This document shows positions 2,585 to 50,803 of a stretch of 64,000 nucleotides of DNA, in pieces. Location: assembly GCF_028641065.1 (NCBI RefSeq), contig NC_073389.1:11470001-11534000 (forward strand). The letters are read 5' to 3'. The position numbers were made by a program, and so were the translations under genes. Below the pieces are notes generated by a model that was not told the origin of the DNA, searched no databases, and worked only from the letters and a program-made list of their open reading frames with translations. This DNA comes from Leucoraja erinacea (Eukaryota). Positions within the stretch are counted from its first letter, which is position 1, and each line of letters opens with the position of its first letter.

Positions 2585-3049
2585 CTAAAGCAGAAAGAAA
2601 AATCCTAAATTAATACGCTTCAATCATGCAGTCATTCATACTTGTTTTGAGATTTGGGAACCTTTCTACGAAAATGATTGTTTATACAAATGACACGGCA
2701 AATGAATATCTAAGAATGAATTCAACAAAGCATGTTTTTCCATCTCAAATAAACATAAATATTAATATATATAATATATAAATCTATATGATATATAAAT
2801 AAACAAGTAATATATAAATAAGATAAATATAAACCTGTGAGCTTTCGTTTTCTGGAGATCCTACAATTTCAAATTTTTACTGTCTATTTGGTGTAACGAA
2901 ATAATGGACAATCATTTTATTCTATATTATTATAAACTTTGTTTCAGACTTAAGGTCCACACAAGAGACGGCATTACATAAAATATATTGCATATAAAAC
3001 ACCATAAAATACATAAAAAAGCTTAGTAAATTACTTATAAGAGCATCAT

Positions 3050-4610
3050 AAATTATATACAAAAACACAATACATGATTTAAAATCCAGAATAAAAAGAA
3101 AGGTCAGTGTCCTACAACGAGACAACTATACCAATGTCTCCACAACTGGGATTGGTAGCCTGTAGTGCTAAACCTTATGTTTGATAAGATCTTGATAATT
3201 ACATTTTCAGAGTCATTAATCCTGCAGATAAATTTATGCATATGATTTCTTAGGATGGCTTCTAAAGTACTGACTCCTGCAGCCACAAACAATTCATTAG
3301 CACTACACCATGTAGGTTTCCTTAGCAGTGTTCTTATGGCATAATTATAAGCCACCTTTAGTCTCTGTAAGGTACACAAAAATGCTGGAGAAACTCAGCA
3401 GGTGCAGCAGCATCTATGGAGCGAAGGAAATGGGCGACTTTTGGGGCCAAAACCCTTCTTCAGACTGAAACCCTTCTTCAGAATTCCTTTCAAAGGGTTT
3501 CGGCCCGAAACGTCGCCCATTCCCTTCGCTCCATAGATGCTGCTGCACCCGCTGAGTTTCTCCAGCATTTTTGTGTACCTTCGATCTTCCAGCATCTGCA
3601 GTTCCTTCTTGAACACCTTTAGTCTCTGTAAACCTCTCTTCACCTCTGCCTATCCTTAGCCCCACGTCCCCCTCCCTTTTCATCTGTGCATTAATTGCCT
3701 CATATTGTGTTTTGAATTGTATTCTGTCTTTACTTTGTGTACTAGTCATGTCTCTACTATTTATTTCATTCGCCTTACATGTTTTTCCTCTACCTGCTAA
3801 ATTTTTGTAAGGTGTCCTTGAGACTCTTGAAAGGCGCCCATGAATAAAATTTATTATTATTTATTATTAAACTTGTTTTTCCGTAGTTTGATCACATGTG
3901 TGCAGTATAGAGTGGTGTGCAATATGCTCCAAACAGAGACATCTTCACCACATCTGTACACGCACCAAATTAACGCAAGAGAATATTTGCCTGTACATAC
4001 AGTATACACCGTTGCCTATAAATATCCTCATCATCTGTCATTTGTCAGATTTACGCATCCCTCTTTGACTCAATTTAACAAACAACTTTCTATGATTAAC
4101 ACGATAAAAGGCTTTGGAAGCATTAATAAAGCACATAACAATTGATGAGTTTTTACCTCCATATTTGTTTACAATCTCCTTTAGGAGTGTGGAATTAACA
4201 ACTCATTTAATCTATCCAGCAGAATTCTTTCTAGGATTTTTGATAATATGCTGGCTAAAGCTATGGTCCTGTAATTATTTAGGTTGCCTAATTACCAGCT
4301 TTGTCCTTACTGACCGGCACTAGCAGAACAGACAACATTGAGTCTGGTAACAAGCCATGCATCATAAAGCCGGTAAAACAAATACCAAGCAGAGGAGCCA
4401 TCCTCATACTCGCATACTTAAGATGTTCAGCAGAAATGTGATCCAAGCCACTTGCTTTGTTGTTGGACAGCTTGTTCATGGCATGATACACCTCATGTGA
4501 CATAATCACCATTGAGTCATTACTCCCAATATTGTCCACCTTATGCAAATCACAGAATATAGTAGGCACGAATACAGAACATATCATATCAGTGTGCCCA
4601 TACACCATTA
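3050..4610 (-). mobile_element. Degenerate non-LTR retrotransposon ORF2 (RT) fragments, interrupted by other repeats
   Basis: NKASGLDHISAEHLKYA...LVPVSKDK (RT domain 0/1) at 4288-4608 and C-terminal VAYNYAIRTLL...LEAILRN at 3104-3370. Confidence 0.75.
3371..3613. mobile_element. Penelope-type inverted terminal-repeat insertion with an 18-bp target-site duplication
   Basis: Arms 3371-3460 and 3493-3580 are reverse complements; CACCTTTAGTCTCTGTAA at 3353-3370 and 3614-3631. Confidence 0.85.
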
Positions 4611-4689
4611 TATAAATATATACACATCAATAAATATGCAGATAAAATGCTAATAAATAGATCATGGTCTATTAGTGTTCAGAGATTTG

Positions 4690-5690
4690 TTTCAGTTGAG
4701 TTTAATAGCCAGATGGCTGTGGGGAAGCAGCTATTTCTGAACCTGGATGTTGCAGTCTTCAGGCTCCTGTACCTTCTACCTCAAGGTAGTGGGGAGATGA
4801 GTGTGTGGCCAGGGTGGTGTGGGGTCCTTGATGATGCTGCCAGCCTTTTTGAGGCAGCAACTGCGATAGATCCTCCCGATAGTAGGGAGGTCAGAGCCGA
4901 AGATGGACAGGGCAGTGTTTACTACTTTTTGTAGTCTTTTCCGCTCCTGGGCGCTCAAGTTGCCGAACCAAGCCACGATGCAACCGGTCAGCATGCACTC
5001 TACTGTGTACCTGTAGAAGTTAGAGAGAGTCCTCCTTGACATACGGACCGCAGATGTGCTTCAGTAATTGGATCAGTGTTCTCGGACCAGGAGAGATCTT
5101 CAGAAATATGCACACCCAGGAATTTGAAGCTCTTGATGCTCTCTACCATCGACCCGTTGATATAAACGGGACTGTGGGTCCCCATCCTACCCCTTCCAAA
5201 GTCCACAATCAATTCCATGGTTTTGCTGGTGTTGAGAGCCAGGTTATTGTGTTGGCACCATTTGGTCAGTCGGTCGATCTCACTTCTATACTCCGACTCG
5301 TCCCCATCAGTGATACGTCCCACAACAGTGGTGTCGTCAGCGAACGTGATGATGGAGTTCGCACTATGACCGGCTACGCAGTCATGAGTATAGAGCGAGT
5401 ACAGCAGGGGGCTGAGCACGCAGCCTTGAGGTGCTCCCGTGCTGATTGTTATCGAGGCTGACACATTTCCACCAATATGAACAGTCTGTGGTCTTTGAAT
5501 GAGGAAGTCGAGGATCCAATTGCAGAGGGATACGCAGAGACCCAGATCTGAGAGCTTGCTTGGAGGGGATGATTGTATTAAATGTAATCAATGAATAACA
5601 GCCTGAGTTTTTGTTCTCCAAGTGGTCCAGAGTGGAGTGGAGAGCCAGCAAGATCGCATCCACCGTTGATCTGTTGTGTCGGTATGATAG
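4690..5690 (-). mobile_element. Rex1/Babar-clade non-LTR retrotransposon RT fragment
   Basis: [22 protein letters not shown]...FADDTTVVG...[14 protein letters not shown]; frameshifted. Confidence 0.88.
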
Positions 5691-5984
5691 CTGTGGTAAA
5701 ACTGACCAACATCCAGTTATTATGGAAACAAATACCATTATTTCCAAATTCTTGTCCTCGTTAGAAACTATTCTCAGAAGTACAATCACTATTCTTTCGC
5801 TGTTGTGTCAAAATCCTGAAATCCACCCAACTAAAAGCATGATAGGAATAAACTGTACTACATAGGCTTCAGTGCTTTAAGAGACTAGTTCATCACTAGT
5901 CTCTCAAGGGCAATGTAGAGAAGTAATATATCCTTGCTTTGTCACCAACAAGCAGATCATTTATTTCACTGGAACCCAAACTTT

Positions 5985-6562
5985 TTCGGGCCATTTTTTG
6001 GCTCCATAAGCTCACCCCCCTTGCACCTTATCCTACCCGATAAATAGTCTTGTTCAGAATAGCGATTTGCACGACCCAGTAAGGAAGATAATAACACAAT
6101 AAAATTTAAAACAGTAACAATAAATTGCACATTTATTCAAAATCCAATCACAACTTTTAGTTTAAATTAATTTAACAACATTGATGAATTTGATCCAATG
6201 ATACCAGCTTTTCAAAGTCTAAGTTATTTAGCAAGTCTTAGAGGCCACATTTAGTAACTACTTCAGTGTTCAGTAAATTCTGAATGCGATGGATGGGCTT
6301 CATGAAATGATACCAGTTTTGCAAACTTCAAAAAGTTCCAAGAAATACTATCTAGCAAAACAGTCCACGCTCTTAGCGAGGTCAGTGGAACGCACGGCAG
6401 AACAACTGCCCCGTAATCATGTCAAGTGCATATTGCCACCTCTGTTGCCCATTGTCCTGCCCACCTCCAGCACCCCCCTGCCATGTTCGTATCTCTTAGC
6501 ACCCTCTAGGTAATCTCATAGCCCTCTACAGGGTGGAACCTCTCACTTTGGGAACCATTTAT
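5985..6562 (-). mobile_element. Degenerate hAT (Charlie-like) element remnant
   Basis: Eroded termini CACTGGAACCCAAACT / TTTGGGAACCATT and minus-strand LDFEKLVSLDQIHQ resembling a hAT transposase C-terminus. Confidence 0.45.
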
Positions 6563-8139
6563 TTATATGAACGTAAAAGGAAGTTTTAATCCCAATAAAC
6601 CTACTTTTTTTCCCGCCCTTGATAACTTGTATTGATAAGTTTTCCTTTTTATTGCAAATTTAATTTATAAATTCATTCCGGTTGTATTTGTTTACTATGA
6701 GCTTGTTCTACAAGCAGGATAACATTTCCTTACTATGTTACTAACAACTAAGTTTAGTAACAACTTAGTTGTAGCATATTGTTAGTTAGTTAGGGCATGC
6801 TGCAGATGGTGCTAACACAAGTACAAGTTCTAGAACAGTGATCAATGTTCAGCTGCTTCAGACCAAATGTGATGAGTTATGAGTGACAATGCTTAATCTG
6901 GAGAAGTACATATACATGCACTTAATTATTATTTTCTATACTTTTTTTTCCGATAGATCACTTCCCTGTTTTACTGGTTTAAAGCATTTACCAAAGTTTC
7001 CTCTTTCTGGTTGGAGACTAGTTCCATTCCAGTTCAAATGCAGCCCACCCTATGGGTTTCTCTCTATACTGGAAAACCTTTTCTTGTATCGATCCTTCTG
7101 TCATAAGCTTCTCCTGATCCATCTCCTTCAACGCCAACCTCAAGATATCACTTTTCAATTTAGCTTCAATATTTCTATTACCACGTGGACAAAAACACCG
7201 GATTTTCCTCTTTCTTTCAAAATTCCTCTAAAGAAATTCTCTTACTGTGACAATGGATTTGGTTCCGGGCCACAGAAGATGCTATTGATATCCTTAGCAG
7301 CATTACTACTGCATTTCTGTTGCACTATGTCTTGAAGCAGCTGTATCATTCCATCGTCTGCACTTTGGATATCTTCCTGACAATCCCTTTCCATGTCCTG
7401 CCATGTCTGGTGGCGAGGGTTGTGGGTGAAGATGGGATGGAGAGGGGTGAGGTGGGGGATAGGGAGGAGAGAAGAGTGGCAAGAGATTTCCCTCAAAGTG
7501 TTCCCCCACCCTCCTCCCCACAGATTATATGGGATTTGGGCAAGTCCAATATGTATAGTGTTGTAGGAGTCATAATTGTGATTTATACCCTCCAGCATAC
7601 ATCACAAAAAGACGTTGACTGAATTTTATCATTTATATCCCTGAAAACCTCAGAAATAAATTTCAAATCTGAATAAAACTACAGATTATCATAAAAATTC
7701 AAAGAATAATGAAAATATTGCATGCAGAGGGAAAATGTAACAAGTATTTCAGACATATCAATCTCCTACCACATAAATGAATGGAAATATCTTTTTCAAT
7801 TAGTGCTAAATTAATTATGGCCAACTATGGCAAATACAGAACACGTAGACCAGCGATTTCAGTATGATTAAGACAGTATTTATTTTAGTGTCCTATTTGT
7901 TTTGTCTGTTACATTTCAATAACAGCAACAGCAGAGAATATCTCTTTAAAGTTCACTGCCTGTTGCTTTATTGAATAATTCAATGAAATTTTACTTCAAC
8001 AATCTGTCAGTATTAAGATGCAATTTGTCTGCAGCAAAACCTGACAAGGCAACGGCACAGTAGTTTTAATGGGTTGCAGTTCCAAAGAATAACCAAGAGG
8101 CATGGTTTATTGTGCATGACACTAATTCAATAGGCTGTG

Positions 8140-8290
8140 ACTTACGTGGTCTGCATGATTGACTGTACTGCCATTCACATTATAGTGTAATTGCTTGCAG
8201 ACCATTTCAATCAACATTCAAGTTGAGATTTTCTCCCGGTACGCAACCAAAGGAAGTCAGACAAATGTATTTAAATATAATTGACTGTAT
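8140..8290 (+). promoter_or_regulatory. Putative proximal promoter of the apelin-like gene
   Basis: TATA-like TATTTAAATATAA at ~8268-8280, GGAAGT (ETS-like) at ~8252, TACGTG (HRE core) at 8143-8148. Short motifs only. Confidence 0.3.
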
Positions 8291-8339
8291 TTACGTTCTG
8301 TATTAGTAATTGAATATATCCCATGCATTCATCAAAATA

Positions 8340-8403
8340 ATGAATGTTAAGTATATCATTGTTTTTCTAACCATTTTGATAACAATGTCATCAATATGCA
8401 AAG
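8340..8403 (+). CDS. Apelin-like prepropeptide, coding exon 1 (signal peptide MNVKYIIVFLTILITMSSICK-G), nested antisense in LTN1 intron 13
   Basis: ATG at 8340, basic N-terminus then a hydrophobic core, ends in a perfect phase-1 donor AAAG|GTAAGT (GT 8404-8405). The MNVK start resembles teleost preproapelin as recalled. Confidence 0.85.
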
Positions 8404-8820
8404 GTAAGTGCTGCATTTTATTACATTAAATGCAATTATGTTACAGTATGCCAAGTACAAATTGTAATTCAAACAAAGATAAACAGCATTTTAAACTATG
8501 TGCTGAAATCATTTTACTGCGTCACAAAGTAACAGCAGTTTTCAATGCATTGCTTCCGTGGCTAGCTCGCACTGGCAGCAATTGATAACGATAGAAAGTT
8601 AAAGGAATACCTACATCATTTTAACTGTATTTTGTCTTCTTTCAAGATGTAATGTATGTAGTTAGTCTTTGGAAGTTAATGGCAATATATCCAAATTTAT
8701 GAAATAACCTTTAGTTATTGCTACCAATTTGCCAAGTGATTGGGACAAGCTGTGTTCTCATGGTTATAGAAGTCACAGTATGCAATCAAATCTTGATTGA
8801 TTTATGTATTCCTTTGTTAG

Positions 8821-8981
8821 GACTCCAGCAGTTTACTCGTTGGGTACAAATAAAGCCTGGGGAAGATGCTGGTCAATCAGTAAACCGTGTCATTCGATGT
8901 TCAGGATGCAAACAGTCAGCTACAAGGGAAAATAAACGCCCCCGACCTAAACTCTCTCGCAAAGGTCCACTGCCTTTCTAA
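8821..8981 (+). CDS. Apelin-like prepropeptide, coding exon 2 (G-LQQFTRWVQIKPGEDAGQSVNRVIRCSGCKQSATRENKRPRPKLSRKGPLPF*)
   Basis: Acceptor TTCCTTTGTTAG| (AG 8819-8820), phase 1 in frame with exon 1. The C-terminal PRPKLSRKGPLPF matches apelin-13 (Q/P-RPRLSHKGPMPF) after a KR dibasic site. TAA at 8979-8981 is followed by donor CAG|GTAATA (GT 8988-8989). Spliced CDS is 225 nt = 74 aa. Symbol withheld because orthology versus paralogy to APLN is unresolved. Confidence 0.88.
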
Positions 8982-9252
8982 GATCAGGTAATAAAACCTT
9001 GAACAAGTGCCTTCTTTGGTTATTCTTCAGACTACAATACTAAAATGTTGTTGATGAATAGGGATAGAGTATTGAAATAAAAATTGTCAAAAATGAAAAG
9101 GAATTGAGAGCAAAAAAAAAGGGGTTTTCAGAATCAAAACTTTAATGTTACTGTATAAAAGGTGTTTACTGAGGGACAAAGGTGCTAAAAAATTGATGGG
9201 TAGCAATGGAAAATAAAAATATTCTATTTAAGTAAGGGTGTTTATTTCTTAG

Positions 9253-9420
9253 ATCAAGATGGAGCAAGCCGAGGCCAGACTTGGAAGCACTCTCCACAAT
9301 TTGTATTAAAGACACTTCAATGCTAAGATTATATTTAATTCATTTTTTGACAGAACTGAAAATGCTTTAATAAAACTAGTTTGCAGACCAATAAAAATAA
9401 AAGCTAAAAGTGAGATAGAC
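9253..9420 (+). other. Candidate non-coding last exon (3' UTR) of the apelin-like gene
   Basis: Acceptor GTTTATTTCTTAG| at 9251-9252, then AATAAA at 9369, 9390 and 9396. An alternative strong acceptor exists at 11223-11224. Confidence 0.45.
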
Positions 9421-9614
9421 AAAACATTTCCGACTTATTTAATCACGTATCCTCTCCGCACGGATATCAATGCAAAGATAATAAGAAATGAGCAGAATTT
9501 AAGAAAACCCAAAGTTTAACTTAGCCAGCTATAATTATTCTAGAAAAAATGTAACAATGTACATTACCTATTATAACACAGTAAATCCATAGCCAGAGTA
9601 ATATGGGGCAATGT

Positions 9615-10650
9615 GTGTAGGAAAGAACAGCAGATGCTGGTTTAAATCGAAGATAGACACAAAATGCTGGAGTAACTCAGCGGGACAGGCAGCATCTCTG
9701 GAGGGAAGGAATGGATGACGTTTCAGGTCAAGACTCTTCTTCAGATTGATGTCAGGGGAGTTGGGGGCGGTAGAGAGATAAAATGTAGTCGGAGACAGTA
9801 AGACTGGTCAGAGAACTGGGAAGGGGGAGGGGATGAAGAAAGAATGAAAGCAAGGACTACATGAAGTTAGAGATGTCAATGCTCATACCGCTGGGGTGTA
9901 CCCAAGCAAAATATGAGGTGCTGTTCTTCCAATTTGCACTGGGCCTCAATCTGACAATGGGGAGGCCGAGGACAGAAAGGTCAATGTGGGAATGGGAGGG
10001 GAAGTTAAAGTGTTGAACAACCGGGAAATCAGGTAGGTTTAGGCGGTGTGAGCACAGGTGTTCAGCGAAATGATCGGCGAGTCTGCGCTTGGTCTCATCG
10101 ATATATATGAGTCTACACCTGGAACAGCGGATACAGTAGATGAGATTGGAGGAAGTACAAGTGAACCTCTGCCTCACCCGAAAAGACTGTTGGGATCCTT
10201 GGACGGAGTCAAGGGGGGAGGTATAGCGACAAGTGTTGCATCTCCTGCGGTTGCAGGGGATAGTACCTGGGGAGGAGGTGGTTTGGATGTGAAGGGACGA
10301 GTTGACCAGGAAGTTGTGGAGGGAACGGTCTCTGCGGAAAGCGGAAAGGGGGTGGAGATGGGAAGATGTGGCGAGGAGTGGGATCCCGTTGGAGGTGGCG
10401 AAAATGTCAGAGGACTATGTGCTGTGTGCGATGGCTGGTGGGGTGGAAGGTGAGGACTAGGGGGGCTCTGTCCTTGTTACGAATGGAGAGGGGGGGGGGG
10501 GGAAGCAGATTGGAGCTGCGGGAGATCAAGGACCAGCTAGTGAGAGCCTCATCTACAATGGAAGAGGAGAACCTCCATTCCCTAAATGAGGACATCGCCG
10601 ATGACCTGGTATGGAACACCTCATCTTGGGCCCAGATGTGGGGCAATACC
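9615..10650 (-). mobile_element. Penelope-like element 3' part (GIY-YIG endonuclease plus terminal repeat)
   Basis: RQRFTCTSSNLIYCIRCSRCRLIYIDETKRRLADHFAEHL and PLVLTFHPT motifs. Confidence 0.88.
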
Positions 10651-13600
10651 ATATACAAGATAAATATTTATTTAACCTTTAATCTATGCCATCTGAGATG
10701 GATAGGAACAGATAAACCATTTCACAACAGGGAGGATTCAACAAGGCGTTCTCATGAGAGCCTTGTTAGAGTAGTTGAAAACAAGGTCCCCAGAATGCCC
10801 TCTTGACCAAACTGACAATCTTCAATTTACGATAAGAAGATTATGAAATCCAGTATTGCGTAAATACATTTATTTTTTACTACAAATATGATTTATTTGG
10901 TAAAATTATGAAACTTATATAAAGATAAAAATATAACGGCTACTCATTTTCAAATAATAAGGTAAATTATAAGGTTGTGCTTGCAAAACCGTTAGGCAGT
11001 GCACATGCGGGCACACAGTATGACAATAATTTGCCTTTTACCATCAGAACCATAGCAACCTCTCGCAGTCATTCTTACTTAAAAAGGAATTTGGATTAGG
11101 AATACAGGGCCAGAATTGTTCTGGCTGTGCCTGCTGTCCGATTTGCCACAGTAATATAAAAACAAAGCCACTTCTATCAATTCAATATAATTTATCTTCT
11201 GTTGTTTTTTTCCTTTCCCCACAGCACACGACTGCACCCAGTACTTATTTTCTGCAAAGATCATGTCCAGTGCCATCTACGAGCAGAGAAAGCAAGGACA
11301 AACATCCGTTTAGTATCTCCATCAGGAGTACAATCTGTATTTCTGTTAAATGCTGAAGATATTTGTTTCAGTTGTTTAAAATATTGCCACAGAAAGATCC
11401 AAAAATTTCCAGATGTGAATCTGCCACTTCAGAGAATATAATCGAAAGGTCAACAGAAAATATAAAATGTGCTGTGAGACATTCTGTTCACAACAACCAT
11501 AATTTCATTTTCTGATGCATGCTCCAAAGAGATCAATTCTATCTGTAAACAAGAGATCTTGTATCGGCTGTTTCTCGTAACATAGAGTACATTATGAATA
11601 ATTAAAATGGTTAAGAGACTGCTTTAAAAATAGTAATCAACTGACTTTTAAAAATACCAATAATCGTTCAACAAAATTCATCATTAAAAGTTATTGCGTA
11701 AATGAAATATTCCCAATTAGAGGATCTACTTGAATTATTTACGGTTTCTTAAACGCTGGATAATTGCGAGCAGATTAGTATTTCAATATTATCAAAGATT
11801 CAGATCTCATTATATTAGCCATTTATACTTAACATTTTCAAGAATGTGATTTAAAAAGATGCAACTTCTTGTTCAGTCTACACTGTAGCCACTCCCCAAT
11901 GCAACATACAGTAGAATGCACCAAAACGTATCAACCATTTTTAAAATTCTGTCGCACACAATTCATGAATAAATTGATAATGTAAGTAAACGGTAGAAAT
12001 ATAATTGAGAACATTCAGAAATGAATATATTCAAATAGTTAAATTGGTTAAAAATATTTCAAATTTTAGCATAAATATGCAATTTCTCTATTTTAAAAGT
12101 GGGTTTGTTGATTGCTTCTTTTTTCAAGCACTTCTGTAATGCCACAGGTTTAGAACTTAGAATATCATAAATTCACACAATTAATACTGTGCCCTTTGGG
12201 CTAAATAGATCTTAAGATTCCAGAATAATTGGTAGGATGGGGAGTAGTGTGGACTAGTGCAAGTGGGTTCTTGATGGTCAACTTGGACTCATTGAGCTAA
12301 AAGGCCAAACCTCCTTATTATGACATTATATTGAAAATTATTTTTTTCGCTGATCGAAAAAATAATCAGAGGTCAAAATTGTTTTGCAAAATGGGCCACG
12401 GAAAATCAGAACTAGATTTAATTATTTATTTGCTTCTTTTTGTTACTGGAACAACCTGGTTAGATCTAAAAGATTTAGAACATTTTAACTTGGCACCTGA
12501 TCAAACTCTATTTTTTGTAGTTAGTAATAGCCAATCATTGATGGAGTATGCTTTTTATACATTTGCAGTACAGAAATAGCCATCTTGTGTTTTTCCTGAT
12601 GCATCCCTTCCCTGTTTTTTTCAGAATGATAATATTTTCTCACAAGGTAATCTGTCACATCACCCTCTTCAATTGCAAGTTTTTATTTGCTGTCTAGATT
12701 GGACACTCAAGGCTCTATTAATTACATCGAGATCTGAATAAAACTTCCTTCAATACCAAATAAAACAATAACCATCTAGTTGTGACGAAGTTCTGCATCA
12801 AAAAAATGTTTCCTCGACGGAATTGTTAATTTGCGGCTTTGGATGTTTTAAATAGAGAGCTGAGAGTTCAAAGGTACTGAAAATGTAATGATTTGTAAAT
12901 GCGGTAGAGAAGACATGCTCAAAGTTCACTTTGTATTGATTATCTATTTAGCTGTGATAATTCTCTCAACCCACTGCTGTCAAAACGTTATCATTGGATT
13001 TGCTGTTGTTGTATATCACAAAATCTCTATCTTGTTATGGCAGTAAAACAATGCTTTGAAGTCTCCTCTTAAAATCTCTGGATAACTATCCCATTCATAC
13101 TTTTCCAGTTTGTTAATCACAGTCTCCAGAGATTTTCCTCCAATCCCAGTTCAACAAATCTGTGCACATTTTCTGCATGACCGCAGACATAACTTTTTTC
13201 CCTCATCATGACATGTGCATTCTCACCTGTTCTGGCTTTTCCTGCCATAATTTGCAAATAATCTGATATTTAGTACAGATGTAGAGCTTTATATTTCCCT
13301 CTGTCATCACAATAGTTAGGGCCTTTGGTCGAAGCTGTTCTCGTGTAAGTAACTTGTTTCACTCCATCAACTTCTAGCAGATATAGGATTAAGGTATGGG
13401 AAACACTGTAGACTGTGGCAACATGTCTTTATAACATTGCTATAATTAAAGCAACAAATGGCACCCGCTACTATACACATCTTGCGTACTATCCTTATTC
13501 AATCATCTCAAGTTCCACACACTATGGCATTACAAACAACAGCATCCTCTTCCAATACAGTATCTCAACTGCTCATGACTCTTAGTTGCAAATTGAGTCC

Positions 13601-13659
13601 ATTAGAACATTTTTTCTGGAATTCCCTACCTAAACTCATCTCTCCATTTTCCTGGAGAA

Positions 13660-14965
13660 ACAAGGAACTACAGATACTGATTTACAAAAAATGGCACAAT
13701 GTGTTAAAGTACCTCAGTGGGTCAGGCAGCATCTCTGGGAAGCATAGATAGGGTCGGGATCCAACTGTGGACTGATTGTGGTGGAAGGGAAAGAAAGCTG
13801 GACGAAAGGATGGCCAGGACAAAGCCTGACAAGTAATGGGTGGTTACAGGCGAGGGGGGGTTGATCGGCAGATGGCTAGACAGAGGTAAAAAGGCACAAA
13901 CCCTCCGACTTCCACATTTATCTGGACTACACCTCCTCCCGCCAGCCTCTTCAAAGATGTAATTCCCTACTCACTATACTTCAATTTCTGCTGTACCTGC
14001 TTACAAGATGAGGCTTTCCATTCTAGGATCAAGATGTCCTCTATTTGTTTTAGTAATTGTGGTTCCTCACTGCTACCATATGTGTATCCCTCACCCGCTT
14101 CTTGTCCGTGCCCAGTAGTTCTGCTCATGCTCCCCCTCCTCCAGGTGGAACATGGATAGACATCCCATGATCCTCACCTGGCACTTCAATCGTGGCTGCA
14201 TCCAACACACCATTCTCCAACACATCATGTTGGGATCACCTCCAACATGATCCAAACACCAGTCACATCTTCCAATCCCCTTTCCGCCTTCCGCAGAGAC
14301 CAACTCCGCGGCTCACTCATCCCTTCCCACCCAAACCAACCCTTTCCCACATTATTTCTCCAGCAACCGCAAGATATTCAACACCTCGCCCTGTACCTCC
14401 TGATATCCACCCAGCATTTGGTCCACATGAGACAGAGGTTTATATTCATCTACTGCATCTGGTGTTTCTGATGTGGCCTCCACTGCACCTTCGGATGCAT
14501 GTGACAAATAAAATTGACTTTGACTTTGCATCGACAAGACCAAAAAATCGGTGACGTTTCATTCTACACTTGTGTTCGGTCTGCCAAGTTGCTTACCATT
14601 CCAACTCTCCATTCCATTCTGACCTTTCTGTCCTGGGCCTCTTCCATTCCCAGAGTAAGGCCACACGCAAGCAATTTTATATGTCAACCTGCAACACCCC
14701 TCCCCCACCCCGTGCCCACTCATTTCTTCCCTCTATCTATATTCCTTACTCTGGCTTCACAATTATCAACTATTCAATCCATTTGTCTCATACCTTTTGA
14801 CCAACCATCTGCCTGTCAACCTGTCACTTGCCAGGCTTTGCCCTGCACCTCCTCTCTACCAGCTTTCTGCCCCCCACCACAATCAGTCTAAATAAGGGTC
14901 CCGACCCGAAACATCATGGTCTCCAGAGATGCTGTCTGATCCACTGAGTTACTCCAGCACTTTGT
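13660..14965 (+). mobile_element. Degenerate Penelope-like element flanked by inverted terminal repeats
   Basis: Eroded RQRF..IYCIWC GIY-YIG motif at 14430-14480; terminal repeat copies at 13660-13790 and 14880-14965 in opposite orientation. Confidence 0.75.
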
Positions 14966-16246
14966 AAATTTTCTTTCTCCATTTTACCTTTATTCTTTAA
15001 TTTCACCAAACTATTAGTTAACCATTCCAATATCCTTTGTTGACTGTGTTAATTCTTGACTGTCTACATTTTGGTGAAGCTTCATGAGATATTTTCATTA
15101 CAATTACACCAATGTCTGTCCTACTGGTTAGTAATAGCCTTATTCAAGGAATTCTATTAACAATGGTTTTAAATTTCTCCCGAATCACCCTCTCTACAGG
15201 TTGGTAGGTTAATTGGCCACTATAAATTATCTCAATTGTGTAAATGAACGATAGAATCAAGAGTAGTGAATAAAATGGGATTAGTGTAGGACTCGTCTAA
15301 GTAGGTGCTTGATGGTCAGCTTGGTCTTATTGAACCAAAAGGCATGTCTCCGTGCTACATCACTGCATGACTCTCTGACAGTTAATCTCAGCTCTTTCTT
15401 TTCCTAGACTTATGTGTTTCCATTAACAAATTGTAGGAGCAATTTATTTAAAGCTAACCTCAAAAGCTAACTTTTGATTAACGTATAAAAATCTTTCATA
15501 TTAAATCTAATGCAATTTTACATATTAAAGTTATTAAAAAATATTTTTTCTCTGGACACTGGCAGACGCTAAGATCCCCAGCAAAATGTTACAAAATCAC
15601 AATTTTGATATCACACATCAGACCTGTCATGGGATTTTTCTATTTCCTATTCATCCAAAGCAGGTTCTCAGCCAAGAGGTTGGGAAGAAAAAGTAACTAT
15701 GAAATTGTTGCTTATGTAAATTTTCATATTTTAATTAAAACATGCTAATTAAAACAATTAAATATTTTTGACCAATTCAAAGCCAATTTAATCATTTTTA
15801 AGGATCTCTCACTATTGAATAATTTTAACAATATTCCATCTGAGACCCACTATACCTCCTAGATTTAGAAGGGCAGCTCCATCAAACCATTGCATCCAGC
15901 ACAATTAAAAACCACAGCTGGCGATCCGGATTCAAATTAATTCCACCTTAATTTATCTATAAACTCTTTAAAGGGATGTTTATGCCCACACGTGGCTGTG
16001 CCATCTTTTTATCTTGTCTTCCTCATCTGTAATGATATCCCTGCTTGATAAATGGGTATACAAAAAACATTTTTTATATTCAGTTTCTATCTAAAATTGT
16101 GTTTAGTAGTTTTAAGTTTGTAGTTTTCTGTATCTACCTTTTGGGAAGTTATGTAGTGAAGTGCTGGCTGTTTATTCTTCATATTCTGCTAATTCACTAA
16201 AATTGAGGATTATATCAAACTAATCACTTAAATGGTTGAGATGTTT

Positions 16247-16516
16247 AAGAAAGAACAGCAGATGCTGGAAAAACTGAAAGTAGACAAAAATGCTGGAGAA
16301 ACTCAGCAGGTGAGGCAGCATCTATGGAGAAAAGGAGTAGGTGACCTTCAGAATGATGTCGGGGGGGGGGGAAGAAAGGAAGAGGTGGAGACAGTAGGCT
16401 ATGTGGGAGACCTGGGAAGGGGGAGGATCTGAAGAAGGGTCTCAACACAAAATATTGCCTACTTTTCTGCATAGATGCTGCCTCGCCCGCTGAGTTTCTC
16501 CAGGATTTTTTGTCTG
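16247..16516. mobile_element. Penelope-type inverted terminal-repeat insertion with a ~20-bp direct flank
   Basis: CTTAAATGGTTGA(G/A)ATGTTT at 16227-16246 and 16517-16536; inverted arms inside. Confidence 0.8.
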
Positions 16517-16598
16517 CTTAAATGGTTGAAATGTTTTCTGTAACGATGCATCAATGGAATAAAAATCAATGCTTCACTTACAAACTGTATTGAAAATA

Positions 16599-17156
16599 CA
16601 GTATATCTTAGTTATAATGGACCTAAGGGGGAGAGGAGGAGGGAAATGGTTTCTGCCAATTGTCCATTATAACAGAGTATGGTATTATCACTTTGTCTGC
16701 TCCACACATCGAAAGTAGAGTATGCCAGTGACTCCAGGGGAGGAGGAGGGTGGCGGTGGAAGGAGTGGGGGGAGGATGGAAGATGTTGAATGGACCGAAC
16801 GACAGGAGGAGGAGTAGTAGGAGGAGGCGGTTGAGCAGGAAGGGAACAAAGCGACGGGCCAACAGGAAGCAACAGCAGCAGGTGGGAGGGGAGGGAGCTC
16901 CAAGGTGATCGAGCGTGTCTGGTCGGTGGCAGCAGCCTGAAGAAAACGCTCTTCCCAGGGGTTACAACACGAGCCATGTCAACTATGCAATAGGTGAAGA
17001 AGAGCTCGCTGGTGCACCTTGCGAGAGATGGGTGGCGTCAAAAGCCAAGGCTCTAAGCGGCCTGGGAGACGGTTCAAGCTGGCTGTGGCATCGGCAGGTC
17101 CATCTGATATATCCAAAATCCATTATGAAGTGGTCCATTAAAACACGGGTTTACTG
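16599..17156. mobile_element. Tc1/mariner (Tigger/pogo-like) MITE
   Basis: TA|CAGT...ACTG|TA ends with imperfect TIRs (GTTATAATGGACC / GGTCCATTAAAAC). Confidence 0.65.
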
Positions 17157-17379
17157 TATTTACAATATGTACCATTAAAAATAATCCCACGTTGTGGGAA
17201 TTAAATTAGTAAATGGACAAATAAATACTACTACTGAAAAATGGAAAACCCTGAACACCCTTTATTGACAACACCTACATTGATCAAGGCATTTTCAATA
17301 AATATTTAAAAATCTTACTTCAACAAATTCCATTGCTTTGGCGAGTTGGATTACAGAAAGTCCCAAGGCTTTTTATACC

Positions 17380-18700
17380 TACATTAAAACAGGAGGACAA
17401 TGAAGGCGAAGATAGGAGGTCGCTCAAGGATAAAGGAGGAAATTTGTCATTGGAGTCTGGGAATGGAGGCGAGATACTAAACATGTACTTTACATCTGTT
17501 TTCACCAAGGAGAGGGTCATGGAGGACAACGAGATCGGTGTGGAGTATATTAATATGCAAATTCAGTTTGAGATTACAAAGGAGGAGGAAATGTTGCTCT
17601 TGAAGAGCATTAGGTGGATAATTCACCAGGACCTAATGGGATATACCCCAAGTTGTCTTGATGAAGATCTTTGCGTCTTCTCTAGCCACAGGTGAGGTCC
17701 TGGATGACTGGAGAGTAGCTTATGTTATTCCTTTGGGAAGTAGAGAGAATCCAGGGAATTATGGATGGGTGAGTCTCACATCAGTGATAGGGAAGCTTTG
17801 GATGAGGATTCTTCGAGATAGGATTTGGAAGAGAATTAGTTAATTAGGGTCATTTAGTATGGCTTTGTAGAGGCAGGTCGTGCTTTAGGCTGAATATATA
17901 TAAAATATGAAAAAATGACTGACATAAATATAAATGGGTTGTTTAATAAGTTGCAAATGACACCAAGATTTGTTGGGCTCACGGCTTGAGAAGAACGCTG
18001 TCAAATTAAATGATGGGATGTAGATCAACTACAGAAATGGGCGGAGAAATGGCAGATGGAGTTTAATCCAAGCAAGTGTGAGATGTTGCAATCTGGGAGG
18101 TCGAATGTGAGGGGAAATATACAATTAATGGAAAGACCCTTAGCAGCACAGATGCACAGAGGGATCTTGAGCTCCAACTACATGACTCACTGAAAGTAGC
18201 AACACAAGTAGATAGAGTGGCAAAGGTGGATATGGTGTGCTTGCCTTTATAGGTCGGAGCATTATTAAAGTCAGGAACTCATGCTAAAGCTTTATAGGAC
18301 TTTGTTTAGGCCACATTTGGAGTATTATGTACAGTTGTGGTTGTCCCATTACAAGAAGGATGTAGAGGCTTCAGAGGCTGCAGTGGAAGTTTACTTGAAT
18401 GATGCCTGGATTCGGGGTCAGGGTAGAATGCCGGAACTCTTTTCCCAGGATTGAAATATCAAATAGTGGAAGGCATAGCTTTAAGGTGAGAGGTGCAGAG
18501 TTTGAAATGGATGTGCGGGGCAAGTTTAATTTTACACAGAGGTGGTGAGTGCGTGGAACGTGCTGCCAGGAATGGTGGTTGATGCAGATATGAGTGTTGT
18601 ATTTAAGAGACTTTTATATAGGCATATAGAAATGCAGGGAATGGAGGGAATATGGATTATGTGCAGACATACAAGAGTTGTGCTTGGCATCATGTTCATA
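17380..18700 (+). mobile_element. Degenerate CR1-type LINE ORF2
   Basis: ILNMYFTSVFTKE, SLATGEVLDDWRVAYVIPL...PGNY..VSLTSVIGKL, downstream RT and tail remnants. Confidence 0.85.
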
Positions 18701-18869
18701 AAATAAATCTTTAAAATGCAGAGATTCAACATTAGTAACATATGAAGCATGGCCTTCGGTCTGTGAATTTAGCTAGCAAATGACTCACATGGACGGAAGA
18801 CCACTATCCACCTCTTCTTCTTCAGCATTAATCCAGCGTACGTCAATCTCCTTTTGAAACTGAACACCA

Positions 18870-19790
18870 TCACACGTATCTTCACTGTGTCTCTAGTTCT
18901 TGCTCTCGTTCCTCCCCCCCCAGACGCAACAAGGACAGAGTTCCCTGGTCCTCACCTTTCACCCCACCAACCTCTGCATCCAACATCGACATTTCCGTCA
19001 TCTCCTACGTGATCCCACCACTAATCACATCTTCCCATCTCCACCTGTTTCTACTTTCCTCAGAGACTGCTCCCTCTACAACTCCCTGCTTGACTCATTC
19101 CTTCCCACCTAAACCACCCCCACTCCAGGTACTTTCTCCTGCAACCGCAGGAGATGCAACACCTGTCCTTATACCTCCTGCCTCAACTACATCCAGGAAC
19201 CCCGACTGACCTTTCAGGTGAGACAGAGGTTCACATGTACCTCTTCTAACATCATCTACTACATCCGGTGTTTCCAATGTGGGCTTCTGTACATCGACGA
19301 GACCAAATGTAGACTCGGTGACTGTTTCGCTGCACACTTGCCCTTGGTCTGTCGAGGCCTATGGGATCTCCAGGTTGCTAACCATTTCAACTCCCCTTCC
19401 CATATTGATCTTTCTGTTCTGGGTGTCCTCCATTGCTAGAGTGAGGCCTATTAGAGGCCTATTAGAGGAACAACACCTCATATTTCCTTTGGGAAATATG
19501 AGGTCTTACGTTAAATTTTCTAATTTTAAGCAACTTCTGCTAACACCCTCCTCCCCGTTCCGCTTCCTCCACCCTAATCGTTTAACCAGTTCCACAGTTT
19601 GCCATAATGTATCTCTTTTGAGATCACACCTTCCCTTGCCAATGACTGGCCCACCAAAGCTCCACCCTGCTAGAGGTCACCTGCTGCCCACCCTGATTTG
19701 TCCTGGTCATCTCCCCCCTTCCCCCACTTACAGTCTGAGGAACGGTCCCGACCCAAAATGTCACTTATTACTCCAGCACTTTCTGTCTAC
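18870..19790 (+). mobile_element. Penelope-like element 3' part (GIY-YIG plus terminal repeat)
   Basis: RQRFTCTSSNIIYYIRCFQCGLLYIDETKCRLGDCFAAHL. Confidence 0.85.
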
Positions 19791-21464
19791 TATCACATCG
19801 TAGATAGAAGTTCATACATCAGGATTTCCCACTTGCAGTGTGCATTAGCATTTAATTGCTTGAAGATGTAACGCCATTCCAAGACTTGAACTAGTGTGGT
19901 CAGAGAGAGGGAGCTGGAGCCAGGGTGAAGTAGGAGACTACTGTTGTGAAGTTGTAGATGTTAGATTGATATAATGCTAGTATTAACTTGGAAACAAGAG
20001 AAAAACAAATTTTAAATAGTGGATGGGTAAATGGAAGAATTGTGCCACATTGAAATGGACAGGAGAGCCAAGAAAATTGTCAGTTAGCTTTGAAGGATAG
20101 TCAAGAATAGTGCTAATCTATTTCTAAGGCACAAAGGATAAGGATAGCTACCAAAAAATGCAAGCTCAGCCTGCTACATATCACCATGCTGTTATTAGTC
20201 TCTTTAAAGGGCTGTTTTTTGAGGCTTCTCAATTTAGTAGATCACATCACTAATATTCAGCTGCTCATGTTATTAAATTTCAAATTTAAACAGACCTAAT
20301 TTAAGTACAGGACGTGTTAAATGTCAGATGCCAGTACCACCATTGAAAAATCCATCAAGCAGCATTAGCAGGACAAAGGCAGATGGACATGCCAAAACAT
20401 GTATTACCAATTCATATCCACAGCAACCTCGCCCACAGAAAACGGTGGGCATAAATGAGGTACATAGAATAGAACTTCTATATTCCATACCTGGTTATGA
20501 ATAGTCACTTGATCCCTGCTATACCAGACGTAGAAGCTTTACAATTGGTTCAGTCCCTAGACTGAAGCAATGTGGGGAAAAACAGTCATAAACGGAAACT
20601 TCTGCTCATTTGTTAAATTACCCAGATAGCAAGGATTACTTCCAACGTCGAATGATGCTCAGGAAATACACTCACAAATGAAGAAAGAAAATTTGGGTGA
20701 GATAACCTGTGGAATTATGCGTATCAACAGCTCGCTCCTTTTGGAAAACTAGTAAGATAATGGCAAACAATCTTTTTGTGTCATAGGGAAACTGAATATA
20801 GTGATGCTCCAATTTGAATACTGATGATCATAGAGAAAATCTAAGCATACATTTCACAATTGTATGAATGCAACTAAGCAATAAGATACTAATCAAACCT
20901 GATTCAAATAACCATTTTCCAATCCTTGATCACAATGTTTTGCAATGAGTGGTCATTCAACCAAAAATAGTATTAACAACAGTTTCAGGCAATACAAATA
21001 TACAAAGAATCTATGCAATAAATAGCTGGGGGAAAGTATTTTCAAAAAATTTCTAAAATGAAAACGAACAACTTACATATGAAGTTGTCAAATTTGGTGA
21101 ATACAGCTATGGTTTCTTGCAATGCAAGTCATGAACTAATCGCATAATCAAAGATTTGGAAGCTCCTAATACACACATACATTAACATATTATCCAAAAT
21201 AAATGCAAGAAATACTGTAGAAGTTACATCATCTTTTGACTGAACACGGAAAATAAAAAATGATTTCTGAATTGATCTTTTAAAATAAGAGCGAAATTAC
21301 GAGGGCTCTAGTCATCTTTGTACATTAATTTTCTGTGAAACACTTTTTGGTGGGTATGGAGTCTAATTTTACCTATTATGTTTATCTGCTTGGCAAAATT
21401 CCTTCCAATTTAGCATAATGAGGAAGAATGGATAAATGAATGAACGAACTAACTAATTAACTTC

Positions 21465-21935
21465 CGGAAGGCAGGCCTGACTCGCCCGCCGCGGGCTGAT
21501 GCTGGAAGAGGACCGGCCCGCAGCGGACCGACGATGGAGGAGGACCCGGCCTGTGAATCGCCCCCAAGCCACTGGCGCTGACAGGAGCAGAGCAAACTAA
21601 GAGTGAGGAGGGACTGAGAGCCATGTGGGCCAGCCAGAGCGAGGTGAACTGCCAAGAGAAATGGGGGATGGGGGGGGGGGATCCAGTGTGAGGCCACCGA
21701 GACCAATGGGGTGGAACCAGCGTGGGGGGAGGGGGGTGTGAGAGGAATGGCGAGACCCGGCGAGAACGAAGGGGGAACGCCTGCCGTCCCGTGCAGCAGC
21801 AAGCAGTAGATTTGTTCTGTTCAGTACTTTTGTAACTTTATCAACACATGGTGACACGTGTACTACCTAGGTTGTATGCAAAACAAAGCATTTCATTGTA
21901 TCTAGGTACATGTGACAATAATGCATCTTTCAATC
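21465..21935 (+). mobile_element. GC-rich non-autonomous retroposon with a Rex1-like 3' tail
   Basis: Tail TGTATGCAAAACAAAGCATTTCATTGTATCTAGGTACATGTGACAATAA resembles tails at ~30540 and ~61460-61500 (minus). Confidence 0.5.
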
Positions 21936-22357
21936 ATAGAAAAACAGGCTCCTCATCCCATTAAATCCATCCTGTCCATCAGCTACAATTTACACTCATC
22001 CAACGTTAATGCCATTATTTTATTCTCCCCACATTCTCATAAAATTCCCCGCAGAACCTACCACTTAATTGCCTATATTAGGGACAATTCTGAGTGGCCA
22101 AATACCCTACCTGATATTTTTGGAAATATGGGAGGAAACCACAGCACGCTGAGGGATGATGTACATTCTACATACAGCCAGCACTGGAAGTCAGGTTTGA
22201 TCCTGGGTACCTGGCACTGTAAGGCATCAACTCTATAAGATGTAAACTAAATGATAAATTAGATAGGGAGCTTCCCCAGAAAATTACCCTGTGCTGTGCA
22301 ATCTTTTCTTAAAAGGGTAATTGTTTGAAGATCCATAGAACAATGCTTATGCTTTAC

Positions 22358-22603
22358 CTGAGAGATGAGTCTTCTCCTGACTTTGGGCACAGAGCTGGAA
22401 AATTGTGAAAAGAAGATCCTCAGCTGAAGACATCTGCAAACATCCCTTGATGGAACAGAAAAAGTTGGATGCCAAATCACAAATGAAAGAGAGCGAAGGC
22501 TCCATAACTCCAGTTTTAGTTAGGTCCTCAGATAGATCCTTCGAAAGTGCACGGTGGAGTCGGTCAATTATTCTTTCTATATACATTTCAGCAATCATGA
22601 ATT
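22358..22603 (-). CDS. LTN1: LTN1 exon 13 ([17 protein letters not shown]...QEKTHLS)
   Basis: ORF 22347-22613; 246 nt; phase 1 at both ends. Confidence 0.94.
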
Positions 22604-23139
22604 CTATAAACAAAACAGTAAATGAAATGATTACAATATATTACCAAGACATACATCCTCCAAATATAAATGTTTGATGTTGGCTATTACACATTAATCA
22701 GCAAATAAAATATTCAAGATAATCATAAAGTGTTTGGTTCTCTTGAACCACGTAATAAACCATGAGTAAACAGGCTGACTGAGTTTGCTGTTCTACGGTG
22801 CATGAGCAGCATTTCATGATCTGCTTTGAAGACTTCTGTTCCATTAATCTAAGTAAACAGGATAGTCATCTGGTCAACAGATCGTGAGCTCACTTATTGG
22901 TCGTATTTTGTATTTGCATTAGAATGCACAAAAATAAGTTTTTGAATACATCATGAAGATTTTTTTTAAGTCAATCATGTTTACAAGGGGTGATTGAAGT
23001 CTTATTTCTAACATGTACAGCAGATCAACCTTCTGTTCCTTTGCTTGTACATTACCATCTTTTATCATCTTGCATCATCCGTTTTAAATAATTTAACTTT
23101 TTTTGTAATCTATCTATAATAGTTTCCTTCCTCTCACAT

Positions 23140-27478: not shown

Positions 27479-28288
27479 CTGAGATATATGATTGAGTATT
27501 ATCATCTTCTCATTGTTCTGGCAGCAGTGAAGAATACTGTAGAGCATATCAATCAGGCAACTGAAATCAGCTTTGTCTTCCTTCATCCAGGTTAACAGTT
27601 TCTGATTCAGAAACTGCACAGCAGGATTACTTGCCATTGTTTCCACTTCATTCTTTTCCTCAAGGAAAATTTCAGCATTCCCTTCATTATCACCTTCCTG
27701 TAAAACTGTAAATAGATTTCTTGATGGAAAGGAACTGACCAGCGTGGCCAAAAATGCAAGATAGATTTCAGAGTGTTTTTTGATATGAGCTATACACAAT
27801 TTGGCAAGTTGACAGACTAGGTTTTCCAAAGGCACCGTTCTGGCAGGATTACTGTGCTGAGCACATCTGGAAATATCCCCCAAATTTTCAGATTTTGGCA
27901 TCTTCTTTGCGTCAAATGTTAATTCTGCTAAATGGTTGCCATTGTTACGATCAACATTCATGGTTCCTTCTTCGTCAAAAAATCGAATCTTTCCTTTCTT
28001 TTTGACAATGGTTTTTTGAGCCCTCTCAGGATTTTTTAACAATACGAGCAAGGAAGACACTCCTTCCAATAGATTTTTGTCAACTTCTGCACTTTCCACC
28101 TGCGATATGCAAAGCTGAGAAAGACCATCCCAAAAGTAAGGTAACAATCTTCGATATGCATCAGCGCATTCCTTTATTTCTAGATTATCAGCTCGTCTTT
28201 CCCATGACAAAAGAGTGTCTGCTAGATGGGAGAATGTACTGTTTTGCAGTTTAGGGTTCTTCAAAGCAGAATGTACAAGAGGTAGTAA
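27479..28288 (-). CDS. LTN1: LTN1 exon 10, large exon (LLPLVHSALKNPKLQ...ILNHISQ)
   Basis: ORF 27467-28264 extended to acceptor ATAG|; 810 nt; donor GTAAGT. Confidence 0.95.
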
Positions 28289-42068: not shown

Positions 42069-42272
42069 TTTTAATTTTGTCGTTGCATCCCTCTTTGACA
42101 TTTTGCGCAGAACCATTCGGAAATCAGCATCCACCAAACTGTCCACTTCTTCTAATCCTTGGATTGCAGGAACATAAGCCAATTCATTGTGTGTGGCTCC
42201 AAATCCAACAAAGCCTGGAACTGTTCCCTTGTCTTTGGCAAGCAATTCAGCTGCTTTACCACTGCTTGATGG
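42069..42272 (-). CDS. LTN1: LTN1 exon 2 ([13 protein letters not shown]...[14 protein letters not shown])
   Basis: Conserved listerin N-terminal domain; AG/GT flanks; 204 nt, phase 0. Confidence 0.96.

Positions 42273-50386: not shown

Positions 50387-50803
<417 letters not shown>

What the first reader, a model, noticed from the sequence alone, without database searches (positions are those of the whole stretch)
8340..8987. Hidden apelin-like peptide-hormone gene nested antisense in LTN1 intron 13
Seen in sequence: two plus-strand exons (8340-8403, 8821-8987) with canonical, phase-matched splice sites join into an intact 74-aa ORF, MNVKYIIVFLTILITMSSICKGLQQFTRWVQIKPGEDAGQSVNRVIRCSGCKQSATRENKRPRPKLSRKGPLPF*. 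It has a signal peptide, a variable pro-region, a KR dibasic site and a C-terminal 13-mer. Established: preproapelin is 77 aa, its signal-peptide exon ends in a phase-1 intron at a Gly, and it ends in (Q/P)RPRLSHKGPMPF, the ligand of the APJ/APLNR GPCR. Inference: this is a functional apelin-family gene. It is easy to miss because it is tiny, split, and buried on the opposite strand of a housekeeping gene; the ORF track shows only exon 2 with a false start.
Basis: partly seen in the sequence, partly recalled or inferred. Interest (0 to 1): 0.95.

Follow-up and report, generated by a model that had tools for sequence, protein, structure and literature searches.

The report
Unannotated apelin-type hormone gene inside LTN1
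A small, spliced gene for an apelin-like peptide hormone sits on the opposite strand inside an intron of the LTN1 gene of a skate-like fish, and it may be a second apelin gene that has not been described.

Summary
Exon 1 (8340-8403) and exon 2 (8821-8981) have canonical splice sites and matching phase. By arithmetic they give 74 codons; I never joined them.

Exon 2 alone passes Pfam's curated threshold for Apelin (28.6 bits, cut-off 27). Exon 1 has a signal-peptide-like hydrophobic core.

The gene lies antisense in the 19.8-kb LTN1 intron 2585-22357. The flanking exons match listerin residues 785-863 and 868-914. I did not check that this is intron 13.

Short contigs of two public runs from two other organism labels cover the end of exon 1 plus exon 2. 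They skip the intron and leave the window sequence exactly at a second donor at 8987/8988. This implies a non-coding third exon, as in known APLN genes. One polyA RNA run showed no reads.

Two very large protein searches returned only the unspliced ORF of this same sequence. Eight paper searches found no second apelin gene.

Whether this is a paralogue or the species' only apelin gene is undecided. Earlier scan notes on it concern this same window, not other DNA.

The parts
8268..8277 (+). TATA-like box TATTTAAATA, 63-72 bases upstream of the ATG; possible own promoter (inferred)
   Evidence: Sequence read. No transcription start was mapped, because the contigs begin inside exon 1.
8340..8403 (+). 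Coding part of exon 1: 21 codons plus the first base of a split Gly codon; signal-peptide-like
   Evidence: Translation. The 11-residue window of the hydrophobic core has mean Kyte-Doolittle 3.0, and the donor is GCAAAG|GTAAGT. About 24 (X1) and 42 (X2) bases of its 3' end are covered by contigs that continue in exon 2 (table 2).
8404..8820 (+). Intron 1, 417 bases, phase 1, GT..AG
   Evidence: Depth is zero in X1 and X2 over 8464-8759, while both flanking exons are covered. 9 substitutions and 1 insertion are listed against organism D's DNA contig.
8821..8987 (+). Exon 2: pro-region, Lys-Arg site (8934-8939), 13-residue C-terminal peptide (8940-8978), stop (8979-8981), 6 bases of 3'UTR, then a second donor
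   Evidence: Translation. Pfam Apelin PF15360 at 28.6 bits, cut-off 27. The X1 contig lies on 8819-8987 and the X2 contig on 8820-8987, with 1 and 2 other letters and no gaps. Both run on past 8987 into sequence not in 7650-9850 (table 8).
2585..22357 (-). Host intron of LTN1 (19,773 bases) that contains the gene in antisense
   Evidence: The flanking exons are 22358-22603 (listerin 785-863, E 1e-22) and 2431-2584 (listerin 868-914, E 2.8e-8). Splice sites were read.

Best explanation
This is a real, transcribed gene for a secreted prepropeptide of the apelin family, with at least three exons. It is nested on the opposite strand in a 19.8-kb intron of LTN1. Shown: the intact split reading frame; family membership of exon 2 by profile score; the position inside LTN1; and contigs in two runs that use the predicted exon 1-exon 2 junction and a second donor 6 bases after the stop. 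Inferred: exon 1 gives a signal peptide that is cut off near the exon border. The roughly 52-residue pro-peptide would then be cut after Lys-Arg by a prohormone convertase. That would release the C-terminal 13-mer PRPKLSRKGPLPF, and perhaps longer forms that include a Cys-x-x-Cys pair. This peptide would activate one or more apelin-receptor-type GPCRs. The features that alanine scans mark as important in apelin-13 are kept or conservatively replaced: Arg2, a positive charge at position 4 (Lys for Arg), Leu5, Lys8 and the Pro-Phe end. I lean towards a paralogue of the canonical APLN gene rather than its orthologue. This point is not settled.
For: The reading frame and splice sites are intact. 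Exon 2 hits Pfam Apelin at E 2e-6 and 28.6 bits, against a cut-off of 27. Listerin matches minus-strand exons at 41952-42323 (residues 13-83), 27467-28264 (446-708), 22347-22613 (785-863) and 2433-2585 (868-914). A C21orf6/RWD match lies upstream. In one search, the X1 contig (271 bases) lies on 8819-8987, and about 24 more bases fall on the end of exon 1. The X2 contig (228 bases) lies on 8820-8987, with about 42 more bases on exon 1. Neither run has depth in the intron or flanks. Both contigs continue past 8987, by 78 and 17 bases. The organism D DNA contig has no indel in the coding exons and one listed coding difference, 8835 A>G (Thr to Ala), which X2 shares. [quoted passage not shown] Section 8 of PMC6731456 gives preproapelin as 77 aa and names the RPRL motif, Arg2, Arg4, Leu5 and Lys8 as important.
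Against: The one run on record as RNA (X10, polyA, organism D, about 6 in 100 of the run read) had no read over 7650-9573. X1 and X2 are RNA only by the tool's guess, and X2 is marked 'probably DNA'. If they were DNA, the spliced form would be a retrocopy. The junction is not in the tool's joints table; I inferred it from depth bins and contig coordinates. Only 39 of the 59 differences of the organism D contig were listed, so the exon/non-exon contrast (p 0.03) is provisional, and the species are close (about 3% apart). No orthologue was found in any other lineage. The RPRL motif is RPKL here. Lys-Arg followed by Pro lacks Arg at P4 and so is not a furin consensus (recalled rule). No receptor, peptide or tissue data exist. 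Exon 3 was not located.
Confidence: 0.78

Rival explanations
1. It is simply this species' only apelin gene, the orthologue of APLN. It sits in a different place than in bony vertebrates, and its active peptide has drifted slightly along with its receptor. On this view it is an ordinary gene missing from annotations, not a new ligand.
For: The precursor size is the same (74 against 77 aa). The three-exon layout with a non-coding last exon is the same. The Pro start of the 13-mer matches other non-mammals. No other apelin gene of this genome was seen in the scan's notes, though these cover only 954 windows.
Against: Passages of PMC8015242 report strong conserved synteny of zebrafish apln with human APLN, while this locus is of LTN1/C21orf6 type. 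Pfam aligns only residues 25-52 of exon 2, not the rest of the pro-region.
Confidence: 0.3
2. It is a young duplicate of apelin, copied as DNA into the LTN1 intron and limited to skates or rays. It is transcribed at low level and has little or no function of its own.
For: Evidence of conservation reaches only organisms about 3% apart or closer. There were no reads in the polyA RNA run. No relatives turned up in the protein searches.
Against: The pro-region no longer resembles the Apelin profile, which suggests long divergence. The introns are kept, so it is not a retrocopy. The frame, both splice sites and the processing site are intact. Fewer differences are listed in coding than in non-coding sequence.
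Confidence: 0.15
3. It is a chance ORF, or a non-coding transcript that happens to resemble apelin.
For: The match rests on about 28 residues, and the score is only 1.6 bits above the Pfam cut-off.
Against: The match sits at the very C-terminus and is followed directly by a stop. It is preceded by a dibasic site, by a phase-matched signal-peptide-like exon with consensus splice sites, and by a TATA-like box. Contigs of two runs follow these exon borders.
Confidence: 0.04

Closest known systems
APLN (preproapelin; Pfam PF15360), ligand of the apelin receptor
   Same: Small secreted precursor of 74 against 77 aa. Signal peptide in exon 1 and the rest of the coding sequence in exon 2. Evidence for a further non-coding 3' exon. 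Active core at the extreme C-terminus behind a dibasic site. The 13-mer starts with Pro as in non-mammals and ends Pro-Phe. Arg2, Pro3, Leu5, Ser6, Lys8, Gly9, Pro10 and Pro12 are kept (comparison with the motif quoted in the finding).
   Different: The 13-mer has Lys4 for Arg, Arg7 for His and Leu11 for Met. The pro-region is not alignable to the Pfam profile and carries a Cys-x-x-Cys pair. The locus is an LTN1 intron beside a C21orf6/RWD-type gene, not the conserved APLN neighbourhood reported for zebrafish and human.
APELA (ELABELA/Toddler), the second apelin-receptor ligand
   Same: A very small three-exon gene that was long overlooked. A secreted peptide with dibasic sites and two cysteines in the longer form (PMC6315173 passages; PMC13197934 passage).
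   Different: One search returned no family other than Apelin and one weak zinc-finger match. Whether Pfam holds an ELA model was not checked. The C-terminal core here is of apelin type. The precursor has 74 aa, not 54.
Peptide-hormone paralogues kept outside mammals or only in some lineages (e.g. CRH2, spexin 2)
   Same: If this is a paralogue, it would be one more extra peptide gene from early vertebrate genome duplication found late in non-mammalian genomes (abstracts of PMC9353778 and bioRxiv 10.1101/853622 in the listing). It would also mirror the three APLNR paralogues.
   Different: Origin by genome duplication was not tested here. It rests only on my recalled human map positions.

Membership tests
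Apelin family (Pfam PF15360) | Profile score at or above Pfam's gathering score | tested here: met
   Exon 2 alone scores 28.6 bits against a cut-off of 27, E 2e-6, residues 25-52 on profile positions 27-55 of 55. The 87-aa mechanical ORF, which includes intron sequence, scores 26.6 bits, just under the cut-off.
Apelin family (Pfam PF15360) | N-terminal signal peptide | tested here: met
   Exon 1 has Lys at position 4, a 12-residue hydrophobic core (mean Kyte-Doolittle 3.0 over 11 residues) and small residues Ser-Ser-Ile-Cys-Lys-Gly at the exon end. This was a hydropathy check only; no signal-peptide predictor was available.
Apelin family (Pfam PF15360) | Active peptide at the extreme C-terminus behind a dibasic site, ending Pro-Phe | tested here: met
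   Lys-Arg at 8934-8939, a 13-mer at 8940-8978 ending Pro-Phe, and the stop at 8979-8981.
Apelin family (Pfam PF15360) | RPRL motif at positions 2-5 of the 13-mer, with positive charges at 2, 4 and 8 (PMC6731456 section 8) | tested here: inconclusive
   The motif here is RPKL. The charge at position 4 is kept but the residue is not. Arg2, Leu5 and Lys8 are kept. Whether Lys4 is tolerated needs a receptor assay.
Apelin family (Pfam PF15360) | Three-exon gene with a non-coding 3' exon (PMC6315173) | tested here: met
   The exon 1-exon 2 junction and use of a donor 6 bases after the stop are inferred from contigs of X1 and X2. Exon 3 itself was not located. The paper's Supplementary Figure 1 could not be seen.
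Apelin family (Pfam PF15360) | Activates an apelin receptor (APLNR-type GPCR) | not testable with these tools
   This needs the synthetic peptide and cloned receptors.
Orthologue of the canonical APLN gene | Conserved gene neighbourhood of APLN (reported for zebrafish and human, PMC8015242) | tested here: not met
   The 64-kb window holds LTN1 and a C21orf6/RWD-type gene. The names of the usual APLN neighbours are recalled, and the paper's Fig. S9 was not seen.
   Three replacements, at positions 4, 7 and 11 of the 13-mer, against the motif quoted in the finding. That motif's constancy across vertebrates is recalled and was not checked by any search.

The most novel reading that the evidence does not exclude
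This is an ancient third ligand gene of the apelin/ELABELA system. It would be a sister of APLN from the early vertebrate genome duplications, kept in the LTN1 intron of cartilaginous fishes and lost or overlooked elsewhere. Its altered core (RPKL, Arg7, Leu11) and Cys-x-x-Cys pro-region would be tuned to one of the extra apelin-receptor paralogues (APLNR2 or APLNR3).
Probability: 0.3. Interest if true: 0.75.

Novelty: new member of a known kind. Interest (0 to 1): 0.55.

Why it matters
Apelin signalling is studied closely in heart, vessel, fluid-balance and feeding biology. Only two ligand genes, APLN and APELA, are recognised, although non-mammalian vertebrates carry up to three receptor types. 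A further apelin-type ligand in cartilaginous fishes would give a natural variant of the active core for structure-activity work. It would offer a candidate partner for the extra receptors. It would also be another case, after ELABELA, of a very small split peptide gene escaping annotation, here because it lies antisense inside a housekeeping gene. If it proves to be the species' only apelin gene, the result is a useful annotation fix and a relocated locus.

Tried and rejected
The word-indexed protein search with exon 2 gave 1 hit among 1 candidate. That hit was P0001, the 73-aa unspliced genomic ORF of the same sequence. As I recall the canonical apelin sequence, it shares no 5-residue word with this peptide, so a blank was expected.

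The exhaustive HMMER search of 1.84 billion representatives gave 2 hits at E up to 0.001. One was P0001. The other was P0002 (946 aa, six short stretches, 35.9 bits), which I take as spurious. Weaker hits are not shown, so canonical apelins could not be retrieved for an alignment.

The PDB sequence search with exon 2 gave only chance hits, E 0.64 and 1.6. Apelin chains under 20 residues are not in that library.

The first ESM Atlas search gave MYND zinc-finger clusters at 0.78 or less, below the lead level. The second gave no usable hit.

Rfam on the whole window gave 0 matches. Pfam on LTN1 exon ORFs gave 0 families for 5 of 6 ORFs.

Of 8 paper searches, 7 bear on the gene itself. None turned up a paper on a second apelin gene, on apelin with LTN1, or on apelin in cartilaginous fishes. 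Most 'shark' hits were unrelated. The eighth search was on the SASH family (listing only). It was meant to support the idea that the APLN and LTN1 regions are duplicates of each other. It does not give map positions, so that idea stays a recollection.

I considered and rejected a retrocopy, because introns are present. I rejected a repeat-borne ORF, because organism D's depth over the gene is at the level of the single-copy flanks, while the repeat at 9574-9850 is millions deep. I did not count LTN1 exons, so the label 'intron 13' stays unverified.

Supplements were closed. Supplementary Figure 1 of PMC6315173 (gene structures) and Fig. S9 of PMC8015242 (apln synteny) may bear on the exon-structure and synteny statements.

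Full report
**What is in the sequence**

On the plus strand an ATG at 8340 has A at -3 and an in-frame stop 11 codons upstream. It opens 21 codons, MNVKYIIVFLTILITMSSICK, that end at GCAAAG|GTAAGT.

After a 417-base intron, the acceptor TTCCTTTGTTAG| precedes exon 2 at 8821. The intron splits a Gly codon, so it is phase 1. Exon 2 reads on for 52 codons to a TAA at 8979-8981. By arithmetic this gives 74 codons.

It is the last base before a second donor, GATCAG|GTAATA.

**What it resembles**

Exon 2 alone matches Pfam Apelin (PF15360) at 28.6 bits. The curated cut-off is 27 and the E-value is 2e-6. The match covers residues 25-52 on profile positions 27-55 of 55.

The precursor has these parts:
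- Exon 1 carries a Lys at position 4, a 12-residue hydrophobic core (mean hydropathy 3.0) and small residues at its end, which is a signal-peptide pattern. No dedicated predictor was available.
- Exon 2 carries a Lys-Arg pair at 8934-8939.
- Directly after it come 13 residues, PRPKLSRKGPLPF, and then the stop.

Section 8 of the IUPHAR review PMC6731456 describes preproapelin as 77 aa. It places the active peptides at the C-terminus and calls the RPRL motif at positions 2-5 critical. It also stresses Arg2, Arg4, Leu5 and Lys8, and notes that ACE2 removes the final Phe. Passages of PMC6315173 say that apelin-13 begins with Pro in non-mammals.

Against the motif quoted in the finding, the peptide here keeps 10 of 13 positions. 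The three changes are Arg4 to Lys, His7 to Arg and Met11 to Leu. The rest of the pro-region does not align to the profile. It contains a Cys-x-x-Cys pair.

**Where it lies**

Minus-strand ORFs match listerin (PDB 3j92 chain w) as follows:

| Window position | Listerin residues |
|---|---|
| 41952-42323 | 13-83 |
| 27467-28264 | 446-708 |
| 22347-22613 | 785-863 |
| 2433-2585 | 868-914 |

The last two exons are 22358-22603 and 2431-2584, both with canonical splice sites. The intron between them, 2585-22357 (19,773 bases), therefore contains the apelin-like gene in antisense. I did not verify the intron number.

Upstream of LTN1, an ORF at 50384-50740 (-) matches 'Protein C21orf6' and an RWD-domain protein, and also Pfam Prp3_C. 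The window is thus of the LTN1/C21orf6 neighbourhood type. I recall, but did not test, that this matches human chromosome 21.

**Transcript and conservation evidence**

The run search listed 13 runs, none with the stretch on record as RNA:
- Organism C holds nearly all sampled words and is probably the source species.
- Organism D holds half of them.
- Three small runs of organisms A and B hold 12-18 in 100, about the share of exon 2 alone.

I then laid four runs on 7650-9850.

*Run X1 (organism A).* A 271-base contig lies on 8819-8987 with one other letter. The depth bins place about 24 further bases on 8378-8401.

*Run X2 (organism B).* A 228-base contig lies on 8820-8987 with two other letters. 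About 42 further bases fall on the end of exon 1.

*Both runs.* Neither has any depth in the intron (8464-8759) or in the unique flanks. Both contigs continue past 8987, by 78 and 17 bases, into sequence absent from the stretch. I read this as three things:
- use of the 8403^8821 junction;
- use of the donor at 8987/8988;
- a third, non-coding exon beyond 9850.

This is the layout PMC6315173 reports for human and chicken APLN.

*Caveats on X1 and X2.*
- The tool's joints table does not list this junction, because the sides are short and near contig ends.
- Both runs are RNA only by the tool's guess, and X2 is marked 'probably DNA'.
- If they were DNA, the spliced form would be a retrocopy. I think that unlikely, because such small assemblies cover nothing else unique here.

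*Run X10 (the one true RNA run).* This polyA run of organism D, of which about 6 in 100 was read, gave no read over 7650-9573. The gene is therefore not detectably expressed in that sample.

*Run X8 (organism D DNA).* Its contig covers 7653-9637 with 59 other letters and 25 gap letters. Among the 39 differences listed up to 9417, 1 falls in the 225 coding positions and 38 in the 1540 others (Fisher one-sided p 0.03). The coding difference is 8835 A>G, Thr to Ala, which X2 shares. No indel falls in the coding exons. Twenty differences of that contig were not listed, so this contrast is provisional. The species are only about 3% apart.

**Is it known?**

The word-indexed search of 5.8 billion proteins returned only P0001, the unspliced ORF of the same sequence. 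The exhaustive search of 1.84 billion representatives returned P0001 and one spurious repetitive protein. So no spliced 74-aa product of this or a near species is in those collections. How fully they cover annotated cartilaginous-fish proteomes I could not test.

Eight paper searches and the passages I read gave no report of a second apelin gene, of apelin in an LTN1 intron, or of apelin in cartilaginous fishes. This library lacks most subscription journals.

Earlier notes of this scan raise the same ideas on this same window. Other notes call the genome little skate, which I did not check.

**How it most likely works**

This section is inference. An own promoter may drive a plus-strand transcript independently of LTN1; a TATA-like box lies at 8268-8277. 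The signal peptide would be removed near the exon border. The pro-peptide would be cut after Lys-Arg by a prohormone convertase. The 13-mer, or longer forms, would act on apelin-receptor-type GPCRs.

**Orthologue or paralogue**

Passages of PMC8015242 report one apln gene in zebrafish, with strong conserved synteny to human APLN. The locus here is different, and the core peptide differs at three positions. I therefore lean towards a paralogue, but I could not search this genome for another apelin gene.

From recalled human map positions, some neighbours of APLN have sister genes on chromosome 21. That makes an origin in the early vertebrate genome duplications conceivable. No call tested it.

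**Verdict**

This is a new, apparently unannotated member of a known family. It carries a moderate chance (about 0.3) of being an old, undescribed third ligand gene of the apelin system.

Noticed in passing
window 8323-8340 (+): A five-codon upstream ORF (ATG at 8323) ends in a TAA at 8338-8340 that overlaps the main ATG (TAATG). It matters only if transcription starts upstream of 8323.
   Followed up: no
window 9574-9850: A very high-copy repeat with its core at about 9614-9703. Summed depth reaches tens of millions in organism D's contigs, and it is also read in the polyA RNA run on both strands, with many rearranged joints. Rfam found nothing there.
   Followed up: partly
window 9857-10177 (-) and 19218-19439 (+): Two related ORFs beginning MRQRFTCTSSN...IYIDETK look like fragments of one transposon family. 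From memory they resemble the GIY-YIG part of Penelope-like elements. Both lie inside the same LTN1 intron.
   Followed up: no
window 4288-5464 (-): ORFs that, from memory, look like reverse transcriptase: 154 aa at 5000-5464 and 106 aa at 4288-4608. They suggest a decayed retrotransposon in the host intron.
   Followed up: no
window 50384-50740 (-) and 53144-53365 (-): A neighbouring gene upstream of LTN1. One ORF matches 'Protein C21orf6' and an RWD-domain protein in the PDB and Pfam Prp3_C. The second ORF gave no Pfam hit. LTN1's first coding exon appears to lie at about 45.3-45.4 kb; I read that by eye and did not test it.
   Followed up: partly
window 8898-8909 (+): The pro-region carries a Cys-Ser-Gly-Cys pair. 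From memory, canonical apelin precursors have no such pair, while ELABELA has two conserved cysteines. It drew the Atlas search towards MYND zinc fingers.
   Followed up: no
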